A stretch of DNA of 42,388 nucleotides, from the NCBI RefSeq assembly GCF_001194135.2, contig NC_068986.1:8640128-8682515 (forward strand). The letters run 5' to 3'. The stretch comes from Octopus bimaculoides (Eukaryota). Under the pieces are notes generated by a model. It was not told the DNA's origin. It saw only the letters and a program-made list of their open reading frames with translations, and did no database searches. Shown in pieces: positions 815 through 40,034 of this stretch (position 1 is its first letter; every line of letters starts with the position of its first letter). Made by a program: the position numbers and the translations under genes.

Positions 815-1332
815 ATTTTTAACGAATCGCAAGTGAAACAAATTTTTGATAAAAGTGGCATCAAGGTGAGTTAGAACTGTGTAAAAATATATCAGCGGTT
901 TAGTAAGAATTACTAAAGAGCTATTCCGAACAACATTCGGTAAACGGATTATAAAATTAAGACAAAAGAGATCTGTTTAGAAATGAAAATTTTCAAACAA
1001 AAATCAATCAAACGAAGGTAAAATGTTAGGTCAGTAACATAGAATCAATATTCTATTGGCTGAGCTAAGAAAGATTTAAAATCTGTTATCTCAATTTTAA
1101 ATCCATCAACAAGAATGAAGTGAATTCCAAACCATTATTCATATACGTGTGATACTCGAAGGAACCCTATTTTAACCACTTCGACATCAACTGGTCAATT
1201 AGCATTCACAACATGCAAAACAATTCCAGCAATACGCTACAAGAAATGTCCTGCAATGACCAAATATCCGATACATTAAGCAACGAATCAGGGATAACAT
1301 CAAAATGCCGTCATGAAGACTTATTTGACTGA
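374..1332 (+). mobile_element. Decayed Penelope-like element (PLE), linker and GIY-YIG endonuclease end
   Basis: Manual translation gives PLE C-terminal motifs: RMLIIFN...NTTF*SFLKLL (from 503; cf. R.R.IIWFNPP...TNIG..FL.LL), QIFDKSGIKVS*NC (from 839; cf. KIFN..TVKVSYSC), RFKICYLN, LFIYV*YSKE...FDINWSI (~1135-1200; cf. LS.YVW.LKE...I.WSI) and ITSKCRH (~1296-1316). Many stops and frameshifts. Consensus motifs are from memory. Confidence 0.65.
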
Positions 1333-1786
1333 TAAATTACAATAGCATTGGTGTATTGGTCGTAAACAAATAGGATCAGTTAAATGTTCACAACATACAC
1401 CTATTATTGCCCTTATCAATATAGGCAATCCGCCATATCCACTGGCCAGAGGTAATAACTTTTGAGTTTACTTTTTTCGAACTTATGAACAACTGACCGA
1501 TTGTGTGTATGTGTGTGTGTGTGTGTGTGTGTNNNNNNNNNNNNNNNNNNNNNNNNNNNNNNNNNNNNNNNNNNNNNNNNNNNNNNNNNNNNNNNNNNNN
1601 NNNNNNNNNNNNNNNNNNNNNNNNNNNNNNNNNNNNNNNNNNNNNNNNNNNNNNNNNNNNNNNNNNNNNNNNNNNNNNNNNNNNNNNNNNNNNNNNNNNN
1701 NNNNNNNNNNNNNNNNNNNNNNNNNNNNNNNNNNNNNNNNNNNNNNNNNNNNNNNNNNNNNNNNNNNNNNNNNNNNNNNNNNNNNN

Positions 1787-1819
<33 letters not shown>

Positions 1820-1955
1820 TCTCTTGATCCCCTCCATTTTTGCTATATATATATATATATACACACACTCACACACGCAATCTTACTAGCCTAAGACTTT
1901 ATTTGATAAAAATACCGAACACACCACGGAACGGTACACACTACCAGTCACCATC

Positions 1956-2068
1956 ATATACATATATACATACACACATACATACATGCATACATACATA
2001 CATGCTTGCATATATACATACATACCTGCGTACACGCATACATACATACATACATACATACATACACA
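1956..2068. repeat. (CATA)n-type microsatellite
   Basis: Direct reading. Confidence 0.9.
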
Positions 2069-2611
2069 TGTTCCCAATCAAATACATCCTCAACTGGTGT
2101 AGATATTCACTCAAAAACTGGCGAACATTCAAACAATTCATGAAGGTCTTTGTTTTCAGGGGTGGTGGTCCGATTTGTATCATCTCATGTAATAACGACA
2201 ATAATAATAGTAATAAAAGGGAGGGCAATAGGGAGGGGAATAAGATGGGGTTTCAATGAATATTTTATGCGGTGAGGGAAAAAGACGGAAAGAGAGAGAG
2301 ATTAGGGATATTAGGGAATCGCTCAAGTAATGTAAAGTTGGAATGACGAGGCGAGGGAAGGGGTCAGTCGCTGTTCACATTTATCCTAATCTTGTGAGGC
2401 TTCTGGTTGATGTCACCAGATTTTGGATTTCCTTGTTCGGCTTACTGTTTTCTGTGTTGAATTTCTTTCCATTCCTTGTATCATGGCTACGATCTATAGA
2501 ACTCTGTACAAGCTGGAGCATGTCATTCTAGTGATATGAGAAGCCAACCGAATATTTACAGTAACGATTCTCAAACCTTAGAGTCTTCTCAGAATTCTTT
2601 ACTCCATTTCT

Positions 2612-2712
2612 CGTCGATTAGATAAGTACCAGTTACGCACTGGGGTCGATGTAATCTACGAGTCCCCTTCCCACAAATTTCAGGCCTTGTGCTTATAGTA
2701 GAACGGATTATT
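2612..2712 (+). mobile_element. tRNA-derived SINE family C, 5'-truncated 3' part
   Basis: gataagtaccagttacgcactggggtcgat...aggccttgtgcttatagtagaa matches the body and tail of the other family-C copies in this window. Confidence 0.8.
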
Positions 2713-2729
2713 ATATATTTTTGTTTTTA

Positions 2730-3955
2730 TCTCAGGTTTTGTTGGAACTCTTGGAGTCTTGCATACATAACGGGTTTGTTGCTTATAGCCCACGGTACCA
2801 TGTTAGGTGGTCAGTCTGTTGCCAGCATTCTCTGAGTGCGGATTAGGTATGCCGTGGATCCTAATGCGCAGAAACGCATTATGAATGGTGAGCGCGTGTG
2901 GGCTCCGTTTGTGAGGCACGTCTTTCCGCAGCTCGTCTCCTTGGCGGAGTTGCTGTCCTGGATGAAAAAAAGACCGAGATTAGGCGCCTGGCACTTAAAG
3001 TGTCGTCAGACACTCACAGCCCTCTACCAGTTGCGCAATGGGATCCGTGGGTATTCCGCTTTAGAAACTTATAGAGGATTAGTGGCGGGGAAGTGCGACG
3101 ACGTGCTCGGAAAGACTCCGGGCTCCGTCGCGAACGAACTGGCTAGTCTGTTTCGGAGGACTTACCGGTCGGGAACTAACATAGATAACTTCCAGATGTC
3201 CTTGGTCTGGCAATGCTACCGGGGGTGAGGCGCTACCGGTTCAAGATAAACTCTACGGGCACAGGTGTGCTGTCAGACGGGCTTGTCCGAGGTGCGCGCA
3301 GAGTGACGAAACTGTTCTGCATGCCCTCCTTAAGTGTCCGGGCATTACTGACTTGTGAGGTTATGTTTAACAGCTTCTGTCACGCGTGGAATGGATCCGT
3401 CTGTCGGCCGAGTCTGTAGTGATGATCACACTGCCGCACTCCTTACATCGGGCAGGCAAGGCAGTTTTCCTTTGCCTGGTGGCTGTGACAAAAGAGGTTG
3501 TTTGGTGGGCAAGGCTGAAAGGTATGAGGATAGATACATTCCTCTTTGGTATAGCTCTCATTGACTTCATCAAGTTTCATTTGAAACGGAAATTGAGAGT
3601 GGAGAGGGAAATGCTGTCCTCGAGTGTGTTTATTGAAAGGTGGGTGAAAGTTGCGAAAAGTGTAGACCTGTGAGTCGCAGAGAAGGAATTGGAGAGGGCA
3701 CTTGCTCTGAGGTTTCAGGGAAATCCCGGACAGTAGGGTTCCTCGATTATCCCTAGAGGCCTTCCTGTTACATCTCTATCATCTTCCCCTTCACCTTTTT
3801 TTTTAAAAATTCCTTTGTATGTTATGCATATGTCCCTTCTTTTTCAATGTAGACTTACTTTCTCTTTTCTTATCATTTCATTATATGTAAACCCCCATAC
3901 TTTATGTGTCTTTGTATTGTCCTCCTCATCCTTCACACTTGTGGCAAATAAATGA
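2730..3955 (+). mobile_element. L1/Tx1-clade non-LTR retrotransposon, 5'-truncated 3' fragment (pseudo-ORF2 C-terminus plus 3' UTR)
   Basis: GLGMP post-RT motif (2840-2854). Cys/His knuckle WQCYRG / ALPVQDKLY...CPRC...ETVLHALLKC (~3208-3340). Frame ends KVAKSVDL* at 3673, followed by a pyrimidine-rich 3' UTR and AATAAA at 3947-3952. Several stops and frameshifts. Confidence 0.8.
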
Positions 3956-3956
3956 A

Positions 3957-3960
<4 letters not shown>

Positions 3961-4039
<79 letters not shown>

Positions 4040-4040
4040 C
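3961..4040. repeat. (TTA)n microsatellite between two tail-to-tail retroelements
   Basis: Direct reading. Confidence 0.95.
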
Positions 4041-4166
4041 ATTAGTATTGAGTGAGAGAGCAACGCAGCCCATCAAAGTGACATTGGGGTAGAAATATAC
4101 GAAGCTTAATATTCCTATCATCACTACTCATCTGAAAAGGATACACCAGGCACATGCATCACAACC

Positions 4167-4450
4167 CTTGACTGCGGCGGACGGCGTTTTCGAGTCGTGA
4201 CCGCCTCTCGACCGGACGGGGCTCCGGGATGATGGGATCCCGGGGTCGCATTGTGTGTTCGAGGTGTCGATGTTCACTGAGTCCTGCAAATCGCATCAGT
4301 TCACGCGGATAGCCGCGCTCTTCATCGACGGACGAGCCGAGTGATCCCCCGCCCAGGGTTTCGGTATTTGCTACTACAACTACTGACCACCACGTACTGA
4401 AAGGGATGCGGTGCGGCGCGGCGCGATGCCGCTCGTTGTCTGCGAAACAT
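4167..4450 (-). other. rDNA/pre-rRNA fragment: about 90 bp ITS1-like + 5.8S + about 33 bp ITS2-like
   Basis: GC-rich flanks on both sides of the 5.8S are not part of family A (absent from the 7021-7222 copy). ITS identity is inferred from position. Confidence 0.7.
4200..4360 (-). rRNA. 5.8S rRNA: Orphan 5.8S rRNA copy, apparently full-length and probably a pseudogene
   Basis: The reverse complement reads AACCCTGGGCGGGGGATCACTCGGCTCGTCCGTCGATGAAGAGCGCGGCTATCCGCGTGAACTGATGCGATTTGCAGGAC...CATCGACACCTCGAAC...CCGGGATCCCATCATCCCGG...GAGAGGCGG. This is colinear with the conserved metazoan 5.8S motifs (GGATCACTCGGCTCG, CGATGAAGAACGCAGC, TTGCAGGAC) and the 3' GC hairpin. No 18S or 28S sequence nearby. 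Confidence 0.92.
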
Positions 4451-4893
4451 ATGGTGGTCTCATATCAAGATAAACAGCGCATGACCTCGCAGGTGGGGCC
4501 CAGTTACAATTGTCTTCAGGTAGAGTAGCCCAACCCGCTCAAAAGTTCCCTGAATAAGGGTTAGTTAAGGGTGTTGAACGAAACACCCATATTTCCAGAG
4601 GTGACTTATCCAAACCCCAAAGAATTCCTCTCATCACATGGCTATGATGCTCCCCCACTACTTCTGCTCGTGATCAGAGATGCACATATTGTCAGCCACT
4701 AAGGGACATGCACAACTGGTTAAGGTCAAACAACTGACAAGCAAATATGTGATATTGAACAGAATATTTGCTTTGGCCCATCTTTGTATACAAGACAAAA
4801 CAATATCCATGATAACACCTCCAATTAGTTAAGATGAGAAGCCATGAGAGCCACTACCTGGTACTGCATCAGGGTAGACATATTATTATTATT

Positions 4894-5170
4894 CCTATTT
4901 GACGAAAACTCTCAGCTTATTTTGCTGGGTATGATGGGAAGTGTCAGCTGTCTCCAGCCAGCAGACTAAGGTGACGCTTATTGATCATGCTCCAAGAACC
5001 CTGCGGTGAACTCTTGCAGTTCCAATCAATGACGATTTTTGTAGGTGTTCTATCTTTACATTTGTACCAATGTTTTTGAGTCACGTTGGCAGAATGGATG
5101 CTGATACTCTCAAGTGCGCCAATCACTCTTGCTCTCACGACCATTCTCTTCATTGCCCAAAACCTGTGTA
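4894..5170 (-). mobile_element. R4/Dong-clade (restriction-like endonuclease) non-LTR retrotransposon, 3' fragment with (AAT)n tail
   Basis: The minus strand gives WAMKRMVVRARVIGALES, then after a frameshift IGTNVKIEHLQKSSLIGTARVHRRVLGA* (stop at 4985-4987), the typical R4/Dong C-terminus (..GALG...LQK.ALLGTARILR.VL). 3' UTR 4894-4984, then AATAATAATAAT. Confidence 0.8.
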
Positions 5171-5174
5171 TTTC

Positions 5175-5249
5175 CGACGAGCACTGGGGGCGATATAATC
5201 GAGTTACCCCAACCCCGCGAAATTGTAGATCTTGTGCCAAAATTTTAAG

Positions 5250-5250
<1 letters not shown>
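5175..5250 (+). mobile_element. SINE family C 3' fragment
   Basis: gagcactgggggcgatataatcgagttacccc...ttgtgccaaaattt matches the family-C tail. Confidence 0.65.
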
Positions 5251-5334
<84 letters not shown>

Positions 5335-5918
5335 TACCACTACGACTACTACTACTACCACCACTACTACTACTACTACTACTTCTACTACTACTACTAC
5401 TACTACTTCTACTACTACTACTACTACTGCTACTGCTACTGCTACTACTACTACTACCACCACTACTACTACTACTATTACCACCACTACTACTACTACT
5501 ACTGCTACTACTTCTACTACTACTNNNNNNNNNNNNNNNNNNNNNNNNNNNNNNNNNNNNNNNNNNNNNNNNNNNNNNNNNNNNNNNNNNNNNNNNNNNN
5601 NNNNNNNNNNNNNNNNNNNNNNNNNNNNNNNNNNNNNNNNNNNNNNNNNNNNNNNNNNNNNNNNNNNNNNNNNNNNNNNNNNNNNNNNNNNNNNNNNNNN
5701 NNNNNNNNNNNNNNNNNNNNNNNNNNNNNNNNNNNNNNNNNNNNNNNNNNNNNNNNNNNNNNNNNNNNNNNNNNNNNNNNNNNNNNACTACTACTACTAC
5801 CACCACTACTACTACTACTATTACCACCACTACTACTACTACTACTGCTACTACTTCTACTACTACTTCTACTACTACTACTACTACTACTACTACTGCT
5901 ACTACTTCTACTACTACT

Positions 5919-6876: not shown

Positions 6877-7020
6877 CTTAAGAATGATCTCTAGCTTACC
6901 ATCCATGCAGGAAGTGCAAAAGATTGTTAACCAGTTCGTCACTCATATTGAGAAAAAACATTGTCGCTGTAAATTTTCTTTCCATTTTCCGCCTTTATTT
7001 GTTTACTTTTATATTTCTTA

Positions 7021-7222
7021 GAAAATTCTAACTGGGCCCCACCGTTAAGGCCATGCGCTGTTGATATGAAATCGCCATGTTGTGCACATACAGTTGTGAT
7101 GCTTGTGCCTGGTGTACCCTTATCAGACGGGTAGTCATGAGAGGTATATCGGGTTTCGTATATTTGTACCCCAATGTCATTTTAATGGTATGCACTGCTC
7201 TCTCGCTCAATAATAATTATAA
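7021..7222 (+). mobile_element. Family A, 5'-truncated 3' fragment with (AAT)n tail (uninterrupted)
   Basis: The reverse complement aligns to 4049-4166 joined directly to 4451-4515, i.e. without the rDNA insert. Confidence 0.85.
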
Positions 7223-7859
7223 TACTATATGGACCCCTGTTAAGAACTAATGTTTTAAAGTATATAGTGTACAATAGTAAATATCTATTGGCAAATAATT
7301 TTGTATGTTATGACGAATCTAAACAACTGTACCACACAATATTATGTTCCATGATAGTGAAAAAAGGTGATGCGGAACTGTTTGACTCTCGTTGGAATTC
7401 TATGATAACAGCTGTGCACCCACCCTAACTATTCAAGAACACACTACTTATAAACCCAGTAATGTTAGGAGGTAAAGTACTCTGGATAAACCAATTTGCA
7501 TATTCAAATTGGTTCTTGGTCCGCTGAGTCTTCAATCTGTCTTTTCTTCTGCTCTTTAAAGTATTCTCTGCACCTCACAGATTATTTAGGGCTCTTGTAA
7601 CTCTTAGTTATTTCCATCCAACTTGTTTCATCTCTATTGAAACATATTCTGACAACCTCCTCCCCATCCCAGACAGTAATAACTAGTTCTTCCAATCCTT
7701 TCCCCAGCAAATGTCAACCCTCTGGAATTCTTTCCGTGTACAAGTTTTCTCTTTTGCTACCAACTTGTAAATCTTCAAACAAAATATATATGTATATTAA
7801 CTACATTGATTTTACCGTCTCGGAGGGACAACGGAGGACTAGCGGAAGCCACAGGTACA

Positions 7860-28399: not shown

Positions 28400-29622
28400 A
28401 TGAGGGACGTAGAAGAATGATATTGAGAACCTGGTTGAGTCAAACGGTTTTTTCATAATCTTTTCAGATGATTTTCAGCAACTTGTGTCTCCGTGAAATA
28501 TCATTAATTTGATACAACTTGTTTTTCAATCCTTGTTGAATTGCTTATCCTTCATTTTCACAATTAACAAATAAATATTAGTTCTTCATTCTTATTTTAC
28601 AACTTTGATAATGGGTGATGAAAAAATGGCAGTTAGACTCATTTTATGCAACCTAAGAAAAGAAGAACTGAATGTAAGGGCAGCGACAAAAGAAATTGAT
28701 GATATGGAAGGCTCAGGAACTGTCAATAAACGTGTGGCACAAAACTGGTTCAGACGTTTCAAGGACGGTGATACCAGCCTCGAAGACAAACCCAGCTCAG
28801 GGAGACCTTCTGTAGTGGAAGATGAGATCTTACTTGAAATGTTTGAACAACAGCTAAGCACAAGCACTCGTACATTGTCCTCAGTACTTGGTCCTTCACA
28901 TAGCACCGTAAATCTCGACACCTCCATCGCTCGGTCTTGTGAACAGACACTATCAAGAAGCTACTCCTGAACTGACCAATGACCAGGTTCAACGACGTGT
29001 GAACATTTGCAAACAATTGCTTGCAAATCCCTGAGGTGCTTGTTTTGGGCGTCGAATTGTAATTGGGAACGAAAATTGGATCTGCAGTTAAGGTGACAAT
29101 CTCAGTGTTTTGGGAGATCCAAAATACATTGTTCTTGTTGACTATCTTCAAAAGAGCCACACCATCAAGGAAGAGTACTATACCAACTTGCCGAGGCAGT
29201 TACGAAAGGCTATCAATGACCAATCACCCAGGAAAACTGATGAAAGGGGCCTTGCTTCATCAGGACAATGCTCCAGCACACAAGTCCTTGGTTCAATGGC
29301 TGCTGTGCATAACTGTGATCTTGAACTGGTTGATCAGCCCCCCGTTCTGTTGATTTGGCCTCATCTGGCTAGCATCTGTCCCCTAACATGAAAAACACTT
29401 GGCTGGGAACCAATATCAAAGTGATGATGTTGTCCCATCTGCTTTTGATGACTTTTTTGACCAACAGGACGAGAGCTTCTTCACCAGCGGGATCCAAGCA
29501 CTGCAGCACCAATGAAAGAAGTGTGTGGACAGCAAGGAGGACTGTGTAGAAAAATAAACCTCATTTGATCACATTCCATGAGAATATCTCGGGCAGCCTA
29601 TTAACTTTTCAGCCGACCCTCG
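28400..29622 (+). mobile_element. Mariner (DD34D) transposon, decayed, internally deleted and apparently chimeric
   Basis: HTH region MGDEK...WFRRFKDGDTSLEDKPSSGRP (from ~28611); PELTNDQVQRRVNICKQLL...RRIVIGNENW (first D motif, degenerate); then SAVKVTISVFW, LLHQDNAPAHK, PPCSVDLASS, KKCVDSKEDCVEK*. The right end CTTTTCAGCCGACCCTCG is followed by TA (29623-29624); the left end is TA-ATGAGGG (28398-28406). Confidence 0.9.
28611..29558 (+). pseudogene. Mariner transposase pseudogene
   Basis: Frameshifts near 28910, 29110, 29230 and 29340, in-frame stops, and a ~40-aa segment missing after the first catalytic motif (junction ~29080). Confidence 0.85.
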
Positions 29623-32020: not shown

Positions 32021-32026
32021 AAGTTA

Positions 32027-32104
32027 ACAAGTGTCACATTAGTCTGCTGGCTGTGGGCAGCTGACACTTTCCATCATACCCAGCAAAATAAGCGGTGAGT
32101 CTTC
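32027..32104 (+). mobile_element. R4/Dong 3' UTR fragment (same family as 4894-5170)
   Basis: ACAAGTGTCACATTAGTCTGCTGGCTGTGGGCAGCTGACACTTTCCATCATACCCAGCAAAATAAGC closely matches the reverse complement of 4914-4982. Confidence 0.8.
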
Positions 32105-32337
32105 AAAAAAGAAGAAGCAGAAGAAGNNNNNNNNNNNNNNNNNNNNNNNNNNNNNNNNNNNNNNNNNNNNNNNNNNNNNNNNNNNNNNNNNNNNNNNNNN
32201 NNNNNNNNNNNNNNNNNNNNNNNNNNNNNNNNNNNNNNNNNNNNNNNNNNNNNNNNNNNNNNNNNNNNNNNNNNNNNNNNNNNNNNNNNNNNNNNNNNNN
32301 NNNNNNNNNNNNNNNNNNNNNNNNNNNNNNNNNNNNN

Positions 32338-36827: not shown

Positions 36828-37088
36828 TGTTGTTACCAGAGGCAGTAGAAAGCCAGAGTAATTTATTTTGAAGCATTTCCTTTCATCTCTTTTCTTTTAA
36901 AGCCCTCGGGGTTTCAGTTTTCCTCTCATTTTCACGGGCTCAATAAGGGTCCATTGTAAGAATCTATCCTTCCCTACAAAATATCCAGCTCTACCAATTA
37001 CTGTGTGTTCCGAATATCCTATGAAATGTGACGTGTGGAGTTATTCTTATATCTCCATCTCCCCCTTGCAAATAAATGAAATTATCAA

Positions 37089-37162
<74 letters not shown>

Positions 37163-37467
37163 GTGAAGGCGCATGGCTCAGTGGTTAGAGCGTCGAGTTT
37201 ATTGCCTATCCCGCTCAAAAGGTCCCTGAATAAGGTTTGTTTAAGGATGTTGAGCAAAACACCCATGTTTCCAAAGGTGAATTATTCAAACCCCGAAGAA
37301 TTCCTCTCAACACATGGCTATGATGCTCCCCCACTACTTCTGCTCATGATCAGAGATGCACATATCTTCAGCCACCAAAGGACATGATCAACTAGTTAAA
37401 GTCAAACAATTGGCAAGCAAATCTGTGGTATTCAGCAGAATATTTGCTGTAGCCCATCTTTTTATAC
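37163..37467 (+). mobile_element. SINE-B head (37163-37198, + strand) fused to an internal family-A fragment (37204-37467, antisense)
   Basis: GTGAAGGCGCATGGCTCAGTGGTTAGAGCGTCGAG, then a sequence colinear with 4526-4790. Flanked by (TTA)n on both sides. Confidence 0.8.
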
Positions 37468-37483
37468 CTTATTATTATTATTA

Positions 37484-37539
<56 letters not shown>

Positions 37540-38618
37540 TATTATTATTATTATTTTTTATTATTATTATTTTTTTTTTATTATTATTATTATTNNNNNN
37601 NNNNNNNNNNNNNNNNNNNNNNNNNNNNNNNNNNNNNNNNNNNNNNNNNNNNNNNNNNNNNNNNNNNNNNNNNNNNNNNNNNNNNNNNNNNNNNNNNNNN
37701 NNNNNNNNNNNNNNNNNNNNNNNNNNNNNNNNNNNNNNNNNNNNNNNNNNNNNNNNNNNNNNNNNNNNNNNNNNNNNNNNNNNNNNNNNNNNNNNNNNNN
37801 NNNNNNNNNNNNNNNNNNNNNNNNNNNNNNNNNNNNNNNNNNNNNNNNNNNNNNNNNNNNNNNNNNNNNNNNNNNNNNNNNNNNNNNNNNNNNNNNNNNN
37901 NNNNNNNNNNNNNNNNNNNNNNNNNNNNNNNNNNNNNNNNNNNNNNNNNNNNNNNNNNNNNNNNNNNNNNNNNNNNNNNNNNNNNNNNNNNNNNNNNNNN
38001 NNNNNNNNNNNNNNNNNNNNNNNNNNNNNNNNNNNNNNNNNNNNNNNNNNNNNNNNNNNNNNNNNNNNNNNNNNNNNNNNNNNNNNNNNNNNNNNNNNNN
38101 NNNNNNNNNNNNNNNNNNNNNNNNNNNNNNNNNNNNNNNNNNNNNNNNNNNNNNNNNNNNNNNNNNNNNNNNNNNNNNNNNNNNNNNNNNNNNNNNNNNN
38201 NNNNNNNNNNNNNNNNNNNNNNNNNNNNNNNNNNNNNNNNNNNNNNNNNNNNNNNNNNNNNNNNNNNNNNNNNNNNNNNNNNNNNNNNNNNNNNNNNNNN
38301 NNNNNNNNNNNNNNNNNNNNNNNNNNNNNNNNNNNNNNNNNNNNNNNNNNNNNNNNNNNNNNNNNNNNNNNNNNNNNNNNNNNNNNNNNNNNNNNNNNNN
38401 NNNNNNNNNNNNNNNNNNNNNNNNNNNNTGTGTGTGTGTGTGCTTGTGTGTTTGTGTCTGTATGTCTGTGTGTGTGTGTGTGTTTGTGTGTTTTATGTTT
38501 GTGTGCGTGTGGGTGTGTGTGTGTGTGTGAATTGAAGGATAAAATTCATATCCCCCGACAAGTTTTTTCTCTATTTTTTTATTACTGTAATTTATGTCAT
38601 GTATCAACAGTGAACTAT

Positions 38619-38649
38619 AGCCAGACCCAGCCAGACCCAGCCAGACCCA
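38619..38649. repeat. 10-bp tandem repeat x3 (AGCCAGACCC)
   Basis: Direct reading. Confidence 0.9.
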
Positions 38650-38908
38650 TCAACCAGTTATAATCCAGAAATTATTCCAGTGTAGCCAACACACTACGGG
38701 CAACAATATGCCAAGCTAATCTCAGTATATGTAGTAGCGTATCTTATTTACATCAAACACCTGACGAGACACAGCCTGTACTTACGGATGCAACACAACT
38801 AGATTTACTATATCCCACCCGTAAGTGGCAGATGGCAGATGCCAGATGGGTCGAAACTATCATTATGCTGAATAAAGATTCTTGCTAAATCCATTTTCCG
38901 TCTCCCAC

Positions 38909-39151
38909 GTACATTGGTCCTCAAATAAGTCATTTCGTTACTCAAGACTAAAATATACTTATTTTTCCTGAAGATAGATAGATTCATACATACATACATA
39001 TATACATACATACATATATATATATATGTATATATCTATGTATGTATGTACTTATAAATTAAGAATGTAATCATTAAAATTATTATATCAGTGGCTAGCG
39101 TATAAAAATGATCCAGACATATATGTACGTGAATACACACAAACGCGCACG

Positions 39152-39212
<61 letters not shown>

Positions 39213-40034
39213 NNNNNNNNNNNNNNNNNNNNNNNNNNNNNNNNNNNNNNNNNNNNNNNNNNNNNNNNNNNNNNNNNNNNNNNNNNNNNNNNNNNNNNNN
39301 NNNNNNNNNNNNNNNNNNNNNNNNNNNNNNNNNNNNNNNNNNNNNNNNNNNNNNNNNNNNNNNNNNNNNNNNNNNNNNNNNNNNNNNNNNNNNNNNNNNN
39401 NNNNNNNNNNNNNNNNNNNNNNNNNNNNNNNNNNNNNNNNNNNNNNNNNNNNNNNNNNNNNNNNNNNNNNNNNNNNNNNNNNNNNNNNNNNNNNNNNNNN
39501 NNNNNNNNNNNNNNNNNNNNNNNNNNNNNNNNNNNNNNNNNNNNNNNNNNNNNNNNNNNNNNNNNNNNNNNNNNNNNNNNNNNNNNNNNNNNNNNNNNNN
39601 NNNNNNNNNNNNNNNNNNNNNNNNNNNNNNNNNNNNNNNNNNNNNNNNNNNNNNNNNNNNNNNNNNNNNNNNNNNNNNNNNNNNNNNNNNNNNNNNNNNN
39701 NNNNNNNNNNNNNNNNNNNNNNNNNNNNNNNNNNNNNNNNNNNNNNNNNNNNNNNNNNNNNNNNNNNNNNNNNNNNNNNNNNNNNNNNNNNGTACATTGG
39801 TCCTCAAATAAGTCATTTCGTTACTCAAGACTAAAATATACTTATTTTTCCTGAAGATAGATAGATTCATACATACATACATATATACATACATACATAT
39901 ATATATATATGTATATATCTATGTATGTATGTACTTATAAATTAAGAATGTAATCATTAAAATTATTATATCAGTGGCTAGCGTATAAAAATGATCCAGA
40001 CATATATGTACGTGAATACACACAAACGCGCACG

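What the first reader, a model, noticed from the sequence alone, without database searches (positions are those of the whole stretch)
4049..4874. ITS1-5.8S-ITS2 rDNA fragment captured inside a retroposon, with an in-window empty-site control
Seen: a complete-looking 5.8S (4200-4360, minus strand) with GC-rich flanks occupies 4167-~4450, splitting a family-A repeat. The family-A copy at 7021-7222 reads GCATCACAAC-TGTATGTGCACAA-CATGG (reverse complement) straight through this site. Here GCATCACAACC (4156-4166) is separated from ATGG (4451) by the insert, about a dozen element bases are missing, and there is no target-site duplication. Established: LINE-mediated template switching onto cellular RNAs produces chimeric retrocopies, and 5S- and 28S-derived SINEs exist. 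Inference: the flanks imply a pre-rRNA or rDNA template rather than mature 5.8S. If family-A orientation is as inferred, the 5.8S is in the same sense as the element, which fits a double template switch (element to pre-rRNA and back). If the chimera is multicopy, it would be a 5.8S-carrying retroposon subfamily. Templated double-strand-break repair is the alternative.
Basis: partly seen in the sequence, partly recalled or inferred. Interest (0 to 1): 0.75.

Follow-up and report, generated by a model that had tools for sequence, protein, structure and literature searches.

The report
5.8S rDNA fragment patched into retroposon
A 284-base piece of the ribosomal RNA gene unit (whole 5.8S plus bits of both spacers) sits as a decaying pseudogene inside one copy of an octopus retroposon, most likely as a one-off patch from DNA break repair, which is a known kind of event rather than a new mobile element.

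Summary
Rfam finds a full-length 5.8S rRNA at 4202-4360 on the minus strand (100 bits). It lies in a 284-nt GC- and CpG-rich insert (4167-4450) that splits one copy of a repeat. Two uninterrupted copies read straight through the site: window 7020-7227, and a full-length copy I fetched from Octopus bimaculoides chromosome CM046622.1. The filled copy lost 13 host bases. It has no target-site duplication and no tail at the insert.

An rDNA unit from a related genome (GCA_024449705.1) has the same unusual 5.8S (152/159 identical). The first 28 nt of its ITS2 align with the insert. The ITS1 side could not be verified.

The window's 5.8S carries seven substitutions. Three of them break helix pairs that are perfect in the functional gene. 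It is therefore a real, decaying pseudogene and not an assembly error.

The host is a single ~570-nt element (4041-4890) flanked by (TAA)n microsatellite.

The junction anatomy best fits break repair with a captured rDNA-derived patch. Double template switching stays possible.

The parts
3960..4040 (.). (ATT)n microsatellite (about 27 units) abutting the host element. It is either the element's (AAT)n tail read on the minus strand or the remainder of a (TAA)n target.
   Evidence: Read directly. The same arrangement occurs at the O. bimaculoides copy (L002 71105-71146) and in degenerate form at 7213-7227.
4041..4166 (.). Host retroposon, left arm. It ends ...GCATCACAACC at 4166.
   Evidence: Aligns to window 7227-7092 (83%) and to L002 70985-71146 (87.7%).
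4167..4173 (-). Seven junction bases (AGTCAAG on the minus strand) of unassigned origin. They may be the species' own ITS2 or filler.
   Evidence: The alignment to the L001 ITS2 stops at 4174. The host alignment resumes at 4166.
4174..4201 (-). First 28 nt of ITS2.
   Evidence: 21/28 identical to L001 4397-4424, starting exactly at the 5.8S/ITS2 boundary. 0.2% of 2000 shuffles reach the score.
4202..4360 (-). Complete 5.8S rRNA pseudogene.
   Evidence: RF00002, 100.2 bits, full model. 152/159 identical to the 5.8S of rDNA unit L001. Three helix pairs are broken that are intact in L001, which scores 117.4 bits with no non-canonical pair.
4361..4450 (-). 90 nt directly upstream of the 5.8S, presumed to be the 3' end of ITS1.
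   Evidence: Contiguous with 5.8S model position 1. GC 57%, CpG o/e 1.52, unlike the host. No significant match to the L001 ITS1, so the assignment rests on position only.
4451..4890 (.). Host retroposon, right arm. It starts ATGGTGGTC at 4451, includes the SINE body shared with 37204-37467, and ends ...CATCAGGGTAGACAT followed by (ATT)4.
   Evidence: Colinear with L002 70971-70537 (83%) and, for 4528-4791, with window 37204-37467 (87.5%).
7020..7227 (.). Partial, uninterrupted copy of the host element in reverse orientation relative to the filled copy. This is the in-window empty-site control.
37163..37467 (+). Related shorter SINE copy. It begins with a tRNA-like head (GGCGCATGGCTCAGTGGTTAGAGCG) and is flanked by (ATC/ATT)n and (TTA)n. 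It bears on the orientation of the host.
   Evidence: An exact 16-nt D-arm is expected 6e-6 times by chance in the window. Rfam's tRNA model does not reach E<=10 there.

Best explanation
A resident copy of a ~570-nt non-autonomous retroposon suffered a break, or a stalled repair or replication intermediate. It was mended by end joining that lost 13 host bases and captured a 284-nt patch from the 45S rRNA transcription unit: the last ~90 nt of ITS1, all of 5.8S, and the first 28-35 nt of ITS2.

The patch was either a fragment of rDNA itself or a cDNA made from a pre-rRNA fragment by one of the genome's many reverse transcriptases. The second option is the 'class 2 templated sequence insertion' or endonuclease-independent route.

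The patch has no function. It has since decayed as a pseudogene at about the same rate as the surrounding repeat.

Shown: the insert, its rDNA origin on the 5.8S and ITS2 side, the empty sites, the 13-bp loss, the absence of TSD and tail, and the pseudogene decay.

Inferred: that a break and end joining were the cause, and whether the patch was DNA or cDNA.
For: - The insert is bounded by the two halves of one element copy, in order and orientation. 13 nt (GTCGTGCACATGT in the L002 copy) are replaced by 284 nt.
- No host bases are duplicated at the junctions. No poly(A) or (AAT)n follows the insert's 3' end. Possible junction overlap is at most a few bases.
- Microdeletion, no TSD and no tail are the criteria given for class 2 templated insertions, that is, break repair with a patch derived from a distant region (PMC5110952).
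- The mechanism works whichever strand the host element is on. That matters because the host's orientation is unresolved.
- rDNA origin: a full 5.8S, 152/159 identical to a cephalopod-type rDNA unit, with the ITS2 start aligned.
- Real and old, not a misjoin. There are seven substitutions relative to the functional-type 5.8S. Four are G->A, two of them at CpG. Three break pairs in helices that are perfect in L001. The score drops from 117 to 100 bits.
- Dispersed rDNA-derived pseudogene fragments, including spacer sequence, are documented in the human genome (PMC5381670).
Against: - No genome-wide or read-level check was possible. If many loci share both junctions, a one-off repair event is wrong.
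- The insert's divergence (7/159 = 4.4%) cannot be told apart from the host copy's private divergence (34/552 = 6.2%; Fisher p = 0.56). Co-insertion with the element is therefore not excluded.
- If the element is on the minus strand, the 5.8S is in the same sense as the element, as template switching predicts.
- The species' own ITS1 and ITS2 were not available. Junction microhomology and filler could not be scored.
Confidence: 0.6

Rival explanations
1. Double template switch during retroposition. While copying the element's RNA from its 3' end, the LINE reverse transcriptase left it at the position of 4166. It copied a pre-rRNA fragment from ITS2 +35 back to ITS1 -90, then returned to the element RNA 13 nt further upstream and finished the copy. 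The chimera was born with this copy or in a master copy.
For: - If the host is a minus-strand element, the 5.8S is in the same sense. Evidence for the minus strand: the apparently 5'-truncated copy at 7020-7227 keeps the CTCAAT(AAT)n end, and the longer (AAT)n runs lie on that side in three copies.
- The ages of insert and host copy are statistically indistinguishable.
- Sense-oriented rRNA segments joined to LINE-1 by template switching or ligation are known for 28S (10.1101/2025.02.02.635956).
- The uninterrupted site folds into a modest hairpin as RNA (-8.8 kcal/mol in the L002 copy). This could stall a reverse transcriptase.
Against: - Known template-switch chimeras carry the foreign RNA at the 5' end after a single switch. 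An exit and re-entry 13 nt apart on the same template, without evident homology, is not a described outcome.
- The related SINE copy at 37163 has its tRNA-like head on the + strand. If the host shares that sense, the 5.8S is antisense and the model fails.
- No second chimeric copy was seen, though the sample was tiny.
Confidence: 0.2
2. Replicative template switching at the DNA level (FoSTeS/MMBIR-type). A stalled or broken fork in the repeat invaded the rDNA array, copied 284 nt and returned.
For: The junction features are the same as for the best explanation: a small deletion, no TSD, and at most a few bases of overlap. It is independent of the host's orientation.
Against: Nothing here separates it from capture of a free fragment. 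Microhomology cannot be scored without the species' ITS.
Confidence: 0.1
3. Assembly or gap-filling artefact. High-copy rDNA reads were wrongly placed inside a repeat.
For: The window is a gap-rich scaffold with 14 runs of N.
Against: - The insert lies in an N-free stretch (1787-5524).
- Both junctions fall at adjacent positions of the same repeat copy.
- The 5.8S is not the functional sequence. It carries helix-breaking and CpG-type substitutions, which abundant rDNA reads would not supply.
Confidence: 0.03

Closest known systems
Class 2 templated sequence insertions, and endonuclease-independent, RT-assisted break repair (Onozawa et al.; Morrish et al. 2002; reviewed in PMC5110952)
   Same: A patch of a few hundred bases from a distant transcribed locus, with no TSD, no poly(A), and a microdeletion at the recipient site.
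   Different: The donor here is the rRNA unit with spacers. The recipient is a retroposon copy in an octopus. An RNA origin is not demonstrated, because there is no splice junction to prove it.
Dispersed rDNA-derived pseudogene fragments outside the arrays (Robicheau et al. 2017, PMC5381670)
   Same: Degraded rDNA sequence, including spacers, lying away from the rDNA arrays and evolving neutrally.
   Different: Here the fragment is a small, cleanly bounded 284-nt piece with empty-site controls that define both breakpoints to the base.
LINE-mediated chimeric retrocopies (U6/L1, 5S/L1, 28S/L1; 10.1101/2025.02.02.635956)
   Same: A structural RNA is joined to retroelement sequence. 28S segments of 50-482 nt are mostly in sense.
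   Different: Those chimeras put the foreign RNA at the 5' end after one switch and are flanked by TSDs. Here the rRNA piece is internal with host on both sides, and 13 nt are lost. That paper never mentions 5.8S (a text search found no occurrence).
rRNA-derived SINEs (5S-derived SINE3/AmnSINE1; 28S-derived SINE28; table in PMC10946416; PMC4994717)
   Same: rRNA sequence inside a non-autonomous retroposon.
   Different: Those are multicopy families in which the rRNA part is a head or module. Here only one copy is known, the 5.8S has no polymerase III promoter, and multicopy status is untested. The text found in that review's table of rDNA-derived TEs lists 5S, 28S and IGS and shows no 5.8S entry.

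Membership tests
5.8S rRNA (Rfam RF00002) | Sequence and secondary structure reach the family's gathering score over the full model. | tested here: met
   100.2 bits against a gathering score of 42, model 1-154/154.
Functional 5.8S gene | Embedded in an 18S-ITS1-5.8S-ITS2-28S unit, with intact conserved helices. | tested here: not met
   No 18S or 28S in the window. No other rDNA similarity. Three helix pairs are broken that are intact in L001.
rDNA-derived insert including transcribed spacers | Flanks of the 5.8S are homologous to ITS1 and ITS2 of the species or a relative. | tested here: inconclusive
   ITS2 side: 21/28 identical, anchored at the boundary, 0.2% of shuffles reach the score. 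ITS1 side: no significant match to the relative (39% of shuffles reach the score). The species' own rDNA could not be obtained.
Break-repair patch (class 2 templated insertion) | No target-site duplication. | tested here: met
   Three-way alignment with two empty copies.
Break-repair patch (class 2 templated insertion) | Microdeletion at the recipient site, and no poly(A) or tail on the insert. | tested here: met
   13 nt lost. The insert ends in ITS2-like sequence directly against host sequence.
Break-repair patch (class 2 templated insertion) | Single locus; donor locus intact. | not testable with these tools
   No octopus genome or reads could be searched.
LINE template-switch chimera | Foreign RNA in the same sense as the retroelement. 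| tested here: inconclusive
   The host's strand is unresolved. The evidence conflicts between (minus; plus).
LINE template-switch chimera | Foreign RNA at the 5' end of the retrocopy, with the whole chimera flanked by a TSD. | tested here: not met
   The insert is internal, with 440 nt of host on one side and 126 nt on the other. The element's own flanks are microsatellite, so its TSD cannot be read.
rRNA-derived SINE subfamily | Many copies at different loci sharing the same rRNA-element junctions. | not testable with these tools
   Four host-family copies were found in about 128 kb (window plus L002), and one is filled. Protein-database searches with junction-spanning frames found no second chimera, but octopus DNA is barely represented there.

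The most novel reading that the evidence does not exclude
The chimera is a member or founder of a 5.8S-carrying retroposon subfamily. It would have been made when a reverse transcriptase jumped from the element RNA onto a discrete pre-rRNA processing intermediate (5.8S with a ~90-nt 5' extension and a ~30-nt 3' extension) and back. The insert's ends would then record natural pre-rRNA ends in an octopus. No 5.8S-derived or 5.8S-carrying mobile element appeared in the literature I could search.
Probability: 0.06. Interest if true: 0.65.

Novelty: new member of a known kind. Interest (0 to 1): 0.28.

Why it matters
As a single event this is a tidy natural example of a genome patching a break with ribosomal-gene sequence. 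Both breakpoints are defined to the base, because two uninterrupted copies of the same repeat are available. It adds a cephalopod case to a phenomenon described mainly in mammals and yeast, and little more.

It would matter more in two cases. If the chimera proved multicopy, it would be the first 5.8S-bearing retroposon. If its ends matched pre-rRNA processing sites, that would point to an RNA template and to reverse-transcriptase involvement in repair, in a genome with very active LINEs.

Tried and rejected
No junction-spanning reads or RNA-seq were examined.

2. The species' own rDNA.
- I translated the stop-free 101-aa frame across the insert and searched the protein collection. That gave one cephalopod-type rDNA unit from another genome (L001) and otherwise generic 5.8S ORFs.
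- The other five frames gave only generic antisense 5.8S ORFs.
- A metagenome scan for the cephalopod-type 5.8S signature found nothing.

3. More host-element copies.
- A metagenome scan for a conserved 25-mer found nothing.
- Exact look-ups of four window ORFs, two spanning the junctions and two in the host's right arm, found nothing on record.
- A protein search with the element's open frames gave one hit, which yielded L002 and one full-length copy.

4. The idea that family A is 5S-derived. I thought I saw similarity by eye, but Rfam in E-value mode shows no 5S or tRNA hit in 6950-7300 or 36900-37594. Rejected.

5. The organism of L001. Paper searches for the accession and the WGS prefix found nothing. 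It remains 'a genome with the same unusual 5.8S'.

6. Host orientation. I tried TSDs (unreadable in microsatellite), T-runs, tail lengths, the tRNA-like head and LINE fragments (no RT ORF in the window or L002). The evidence conflicts and the question is left open.

7. A hairpin at the lost 13 nt as the cause of a polymerase jump. The fold is modest (-8.8 and -4.8 kcal/mol) and the deletion does not match the stem. Not used as evidence.

Full report
**What is there**

Rfam's 5.8S model (RF00002) matches window 4360->4202 on the minus strand over the whole model. The score is 100.2 bits against a gathering score of 42, E=3.4e-24. It is the only Rfam family found in the 42 kb.

The 5.8S sits in a 284-nt block, 4167-4450. 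The block has 61% G+C and a CpG observed/expected ratio of 1.37. The repeat on either side has 41-43% G+C and CpG o/e of 0.25-0.38.

**The host and the empty sites**

- A self-comparison shows that 4031-4166 matches 7227-7092 in reverse complement (83%). It also shows that 4451-4515 matches 7078-7020, and that 4528-4791 matches 37204-37467 (87.5%).
- I translated the open frames of the uninterrupted copy and searched the protein collection. One hit came back: an annotated Octopus bimaculoides PP2A B55-alpha isoform that reads through a copy of the repeat.
- The gene locus of that isoform is L002 (GCA_001194135.2, CM046622.1:4880259-4965955). It holds one full-length, uninterrupted copy at 70537-71146.
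- That copy is colinear with window 4890->4451 and 4166->4005.
- The host is therefore a single element of about 570 nt, at window 4041-4890. It is not 'family A' next to another repeat.
- Read on the minus strand of the window, the L002 copy has CACCAT GTCGTGCACATGT GGTTGTGATGC at the site. The 7020 copy has CGCCAT GTTGTGCACATACA GTTGTGATGC. The filled copy has CACCAT [284 nt] GGTTGTGATGC.
- So 13 host bases were lost and nothing is duplicated. The insert's 3' end has no tail and lies directly against host sequence.

**Is the insert rDNA with spacers?**

- The minus strand of the insert is free of stop codons in one frame for 101 codons. I used that translation as a handle.
- It retrieved a spurious ORF on contig JAANSU010002027.1 of assembly GCA_024449705.1 (L001). 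This contig is an rDNA unit: 18S at 1080-3944, 5.8S at 4238-4396, and 28S from 4844.
- Its 5.8S has the same unusual sequence as the window's, 152 of 159 bases identical. The alignment runs on for 28 nt into ITS2.
- The ITS2 stretch is 21/28 identical. It is anchored exactly at the 5.8S/ITS2 boundary, and 0.2% of 2000 shuffles reach its score.
- The 90 nt upstream of the 5.8S show no significant similarity to that unit's ITS1; 39% of shuffles reach the score. ITS1 evolves fast and L001 is another species, so this does not count against an ITS1 origin. The assignment rests on contiguity and composition only.
- The last seven bases of the insert (4167-4173) are unassigned.
- I could not identify the organism of L001.

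**Real locus, not a misjoin**

- L001's 5.8S scores 117.4 bits with no non-canonical pair.
- The window's copy scores 100.2 bits and has three broken pairs. One is in the short GAACGCA helix and two are in the 9-bp GC hairpin, which is perfect in L001.
- Of the seven differences, four are G->A, and two of those are at CpG.
- Abundant functional rDNA reads would not produce this sequence.
- The insert lies in an N-free stretch (1787-5524).
- Both junctions fall at adjacent positions of one repeat copy.

**Age**

- In three-way alignments the filled host copy has 34 private substitutions in 552 aligned sites (6.2%).
- The 5.8S has 7 in 159 (4.4%). The two rates do not differ (Fisher p = 0.56).
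- The insert is therefore old, of the same order as the host copy. Age cannot tell whether the two arrived together.

**Orientation of the host**

This matters because template switching needs the 5.8S and the element to be in the same sense.

- For the minus strand: the copy at 7020-7227 keeps the CTCAAT(AAT)n end and lacks the other end, as a 5'-truncated retrocopy would. All three copies that include this end have the longer (AAT)n run on that side, up to about 27 units.
- For the plus strand: the related shorter copy at 37163-37467 begins, right after a microsatellite, with GGCGCATGGCTCAGTGGTTAGAGCG. This contains a perfect 16-nt tRNA D-arm, expected 6e-6 times by chance. That is how a tRNA-derived SINE starts. 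However, Rfam's tRNA model does not reach E<=10 there.
- The two full-length copies and the 37163 copy have TAA/ATT microsatellite on both sides.
- That fits a microsatellite-targeting LINE partner of the Dong/R4 type. Dong elements target (TAA)n, including in a snail (PMC3812793). Dong-R4 accounts for the most recent LINE insertions in O. vulgaris (PMC13282606).
- It also makes the element's own target-site duplication unreadable.
- I leave the orientation open.

**Mechanism**

A microdeletion, no duplication and no tail define the break-repair class of templated insertions. They are the opposite of the LINE-mediated class (PMC5110952).

This route works whichever strand the host is on. It allows either a DNA fragment of rDNA or a cDNA of a pre-rRNA fragment as the patch.

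Known template-switch chimeras place the foreign RNA at the 5' end after one switch and carry TSDs (10.1101/2025.02.02.635956). An internal insert with re-entry 13 nt upstream would need two switches on the same template without evident homology.

I put break repair at about 0.6. A DNA-level replicative switch gets a further 0.1.

**Copy number**

This was the point on which the finding's interest turned, and it could not be tested.

- No second chimera appeared among four host-family copies in about 128 kb.
- None appeared in protein-database searches with junction-spanning frames. Octopus DNA is almost absent from the searchable collections, so this says little.

**Comparison with what is known**

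Dispersed rDNA pseudogene fragments are documented in the human genome (PMC5381670). rRNA-derived mobile elements are known for 5S and 28S. I found no 5.8S example in the review table or in the LINE-1 chimera survey that I could search.

As a single locus this is a new example of a known kind of event. Only a multicopy result would make it a new kind of retroposon.

Noticed in passing
window 3960-4040, 4881-4893, 37086-37162, 37468-37594; L002 70537-70550 and 71105-71146: The two full-length copies of the host element and the 37163 copy are flanked on both sides by TAA/ATT microsatellite. This suggests that a microsatellite-targeting (Dong/R4-like) LINE mobilises this SINE family. No LINE reverse-transcriptase ORF was present in the window or L002 to test this.
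   Followed up: partly
window 3930-3960 and 37055-37085: The same motif, (C)TTG..GCAAATAAATGAAAT, lies immediately upstream of the microsatellite that precedes two different SINE copies. It contains an AATAAA-like signal. It may be the extreme 3' end of another, heavily 5'-truncated element whose tail was later used as a target.
   Followed up: partly
L002 70961-71485 (O. bimaculoides CM046622.1): The annotated PP2A B55-alpha isoform (P0010) reads through the retroposon copy and its (AAT)n run, giving a poly-Asn stretch, before joining a genuine PP2A exon. This is either exonisation of the repeat or an annotation artefact.
   Followed up: no
window 28575-28967 (+): An open frame with a Mos1-type transposase HTH domain (Pfam HTH_48, 31.4 bits against a cutoff of 24.1). 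It is a mariner-like transposon remnant.
   Followed up: partly
window 39007-39067 and 39890-39950: A ~60-nt stretch is repeated on either side of the N run 39213-39791. This looks like a gap-edge duplication from scaffolding. The long 'inverted repeats' reported around 37849-39791, and several others, are N runs matching N runs.
   Followed up: no
L001 1080-3944: The 18S of the related rDNA unit spans 2865 nt against a model of 1831 positions, so it has very large expansion segments. Its 5.8S departs from the metazoan consensus at many normally conserved positions but keeps all helices.
   Followed up: no
window 4883-4982 and 32026-32125: Another repeat family begins directly after the (ATT)4 that ends the host element (81% identity, reverse orientation, next to an N run). 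The region is a chain of elements joined by ATT microsatellites.
   Followed up: no
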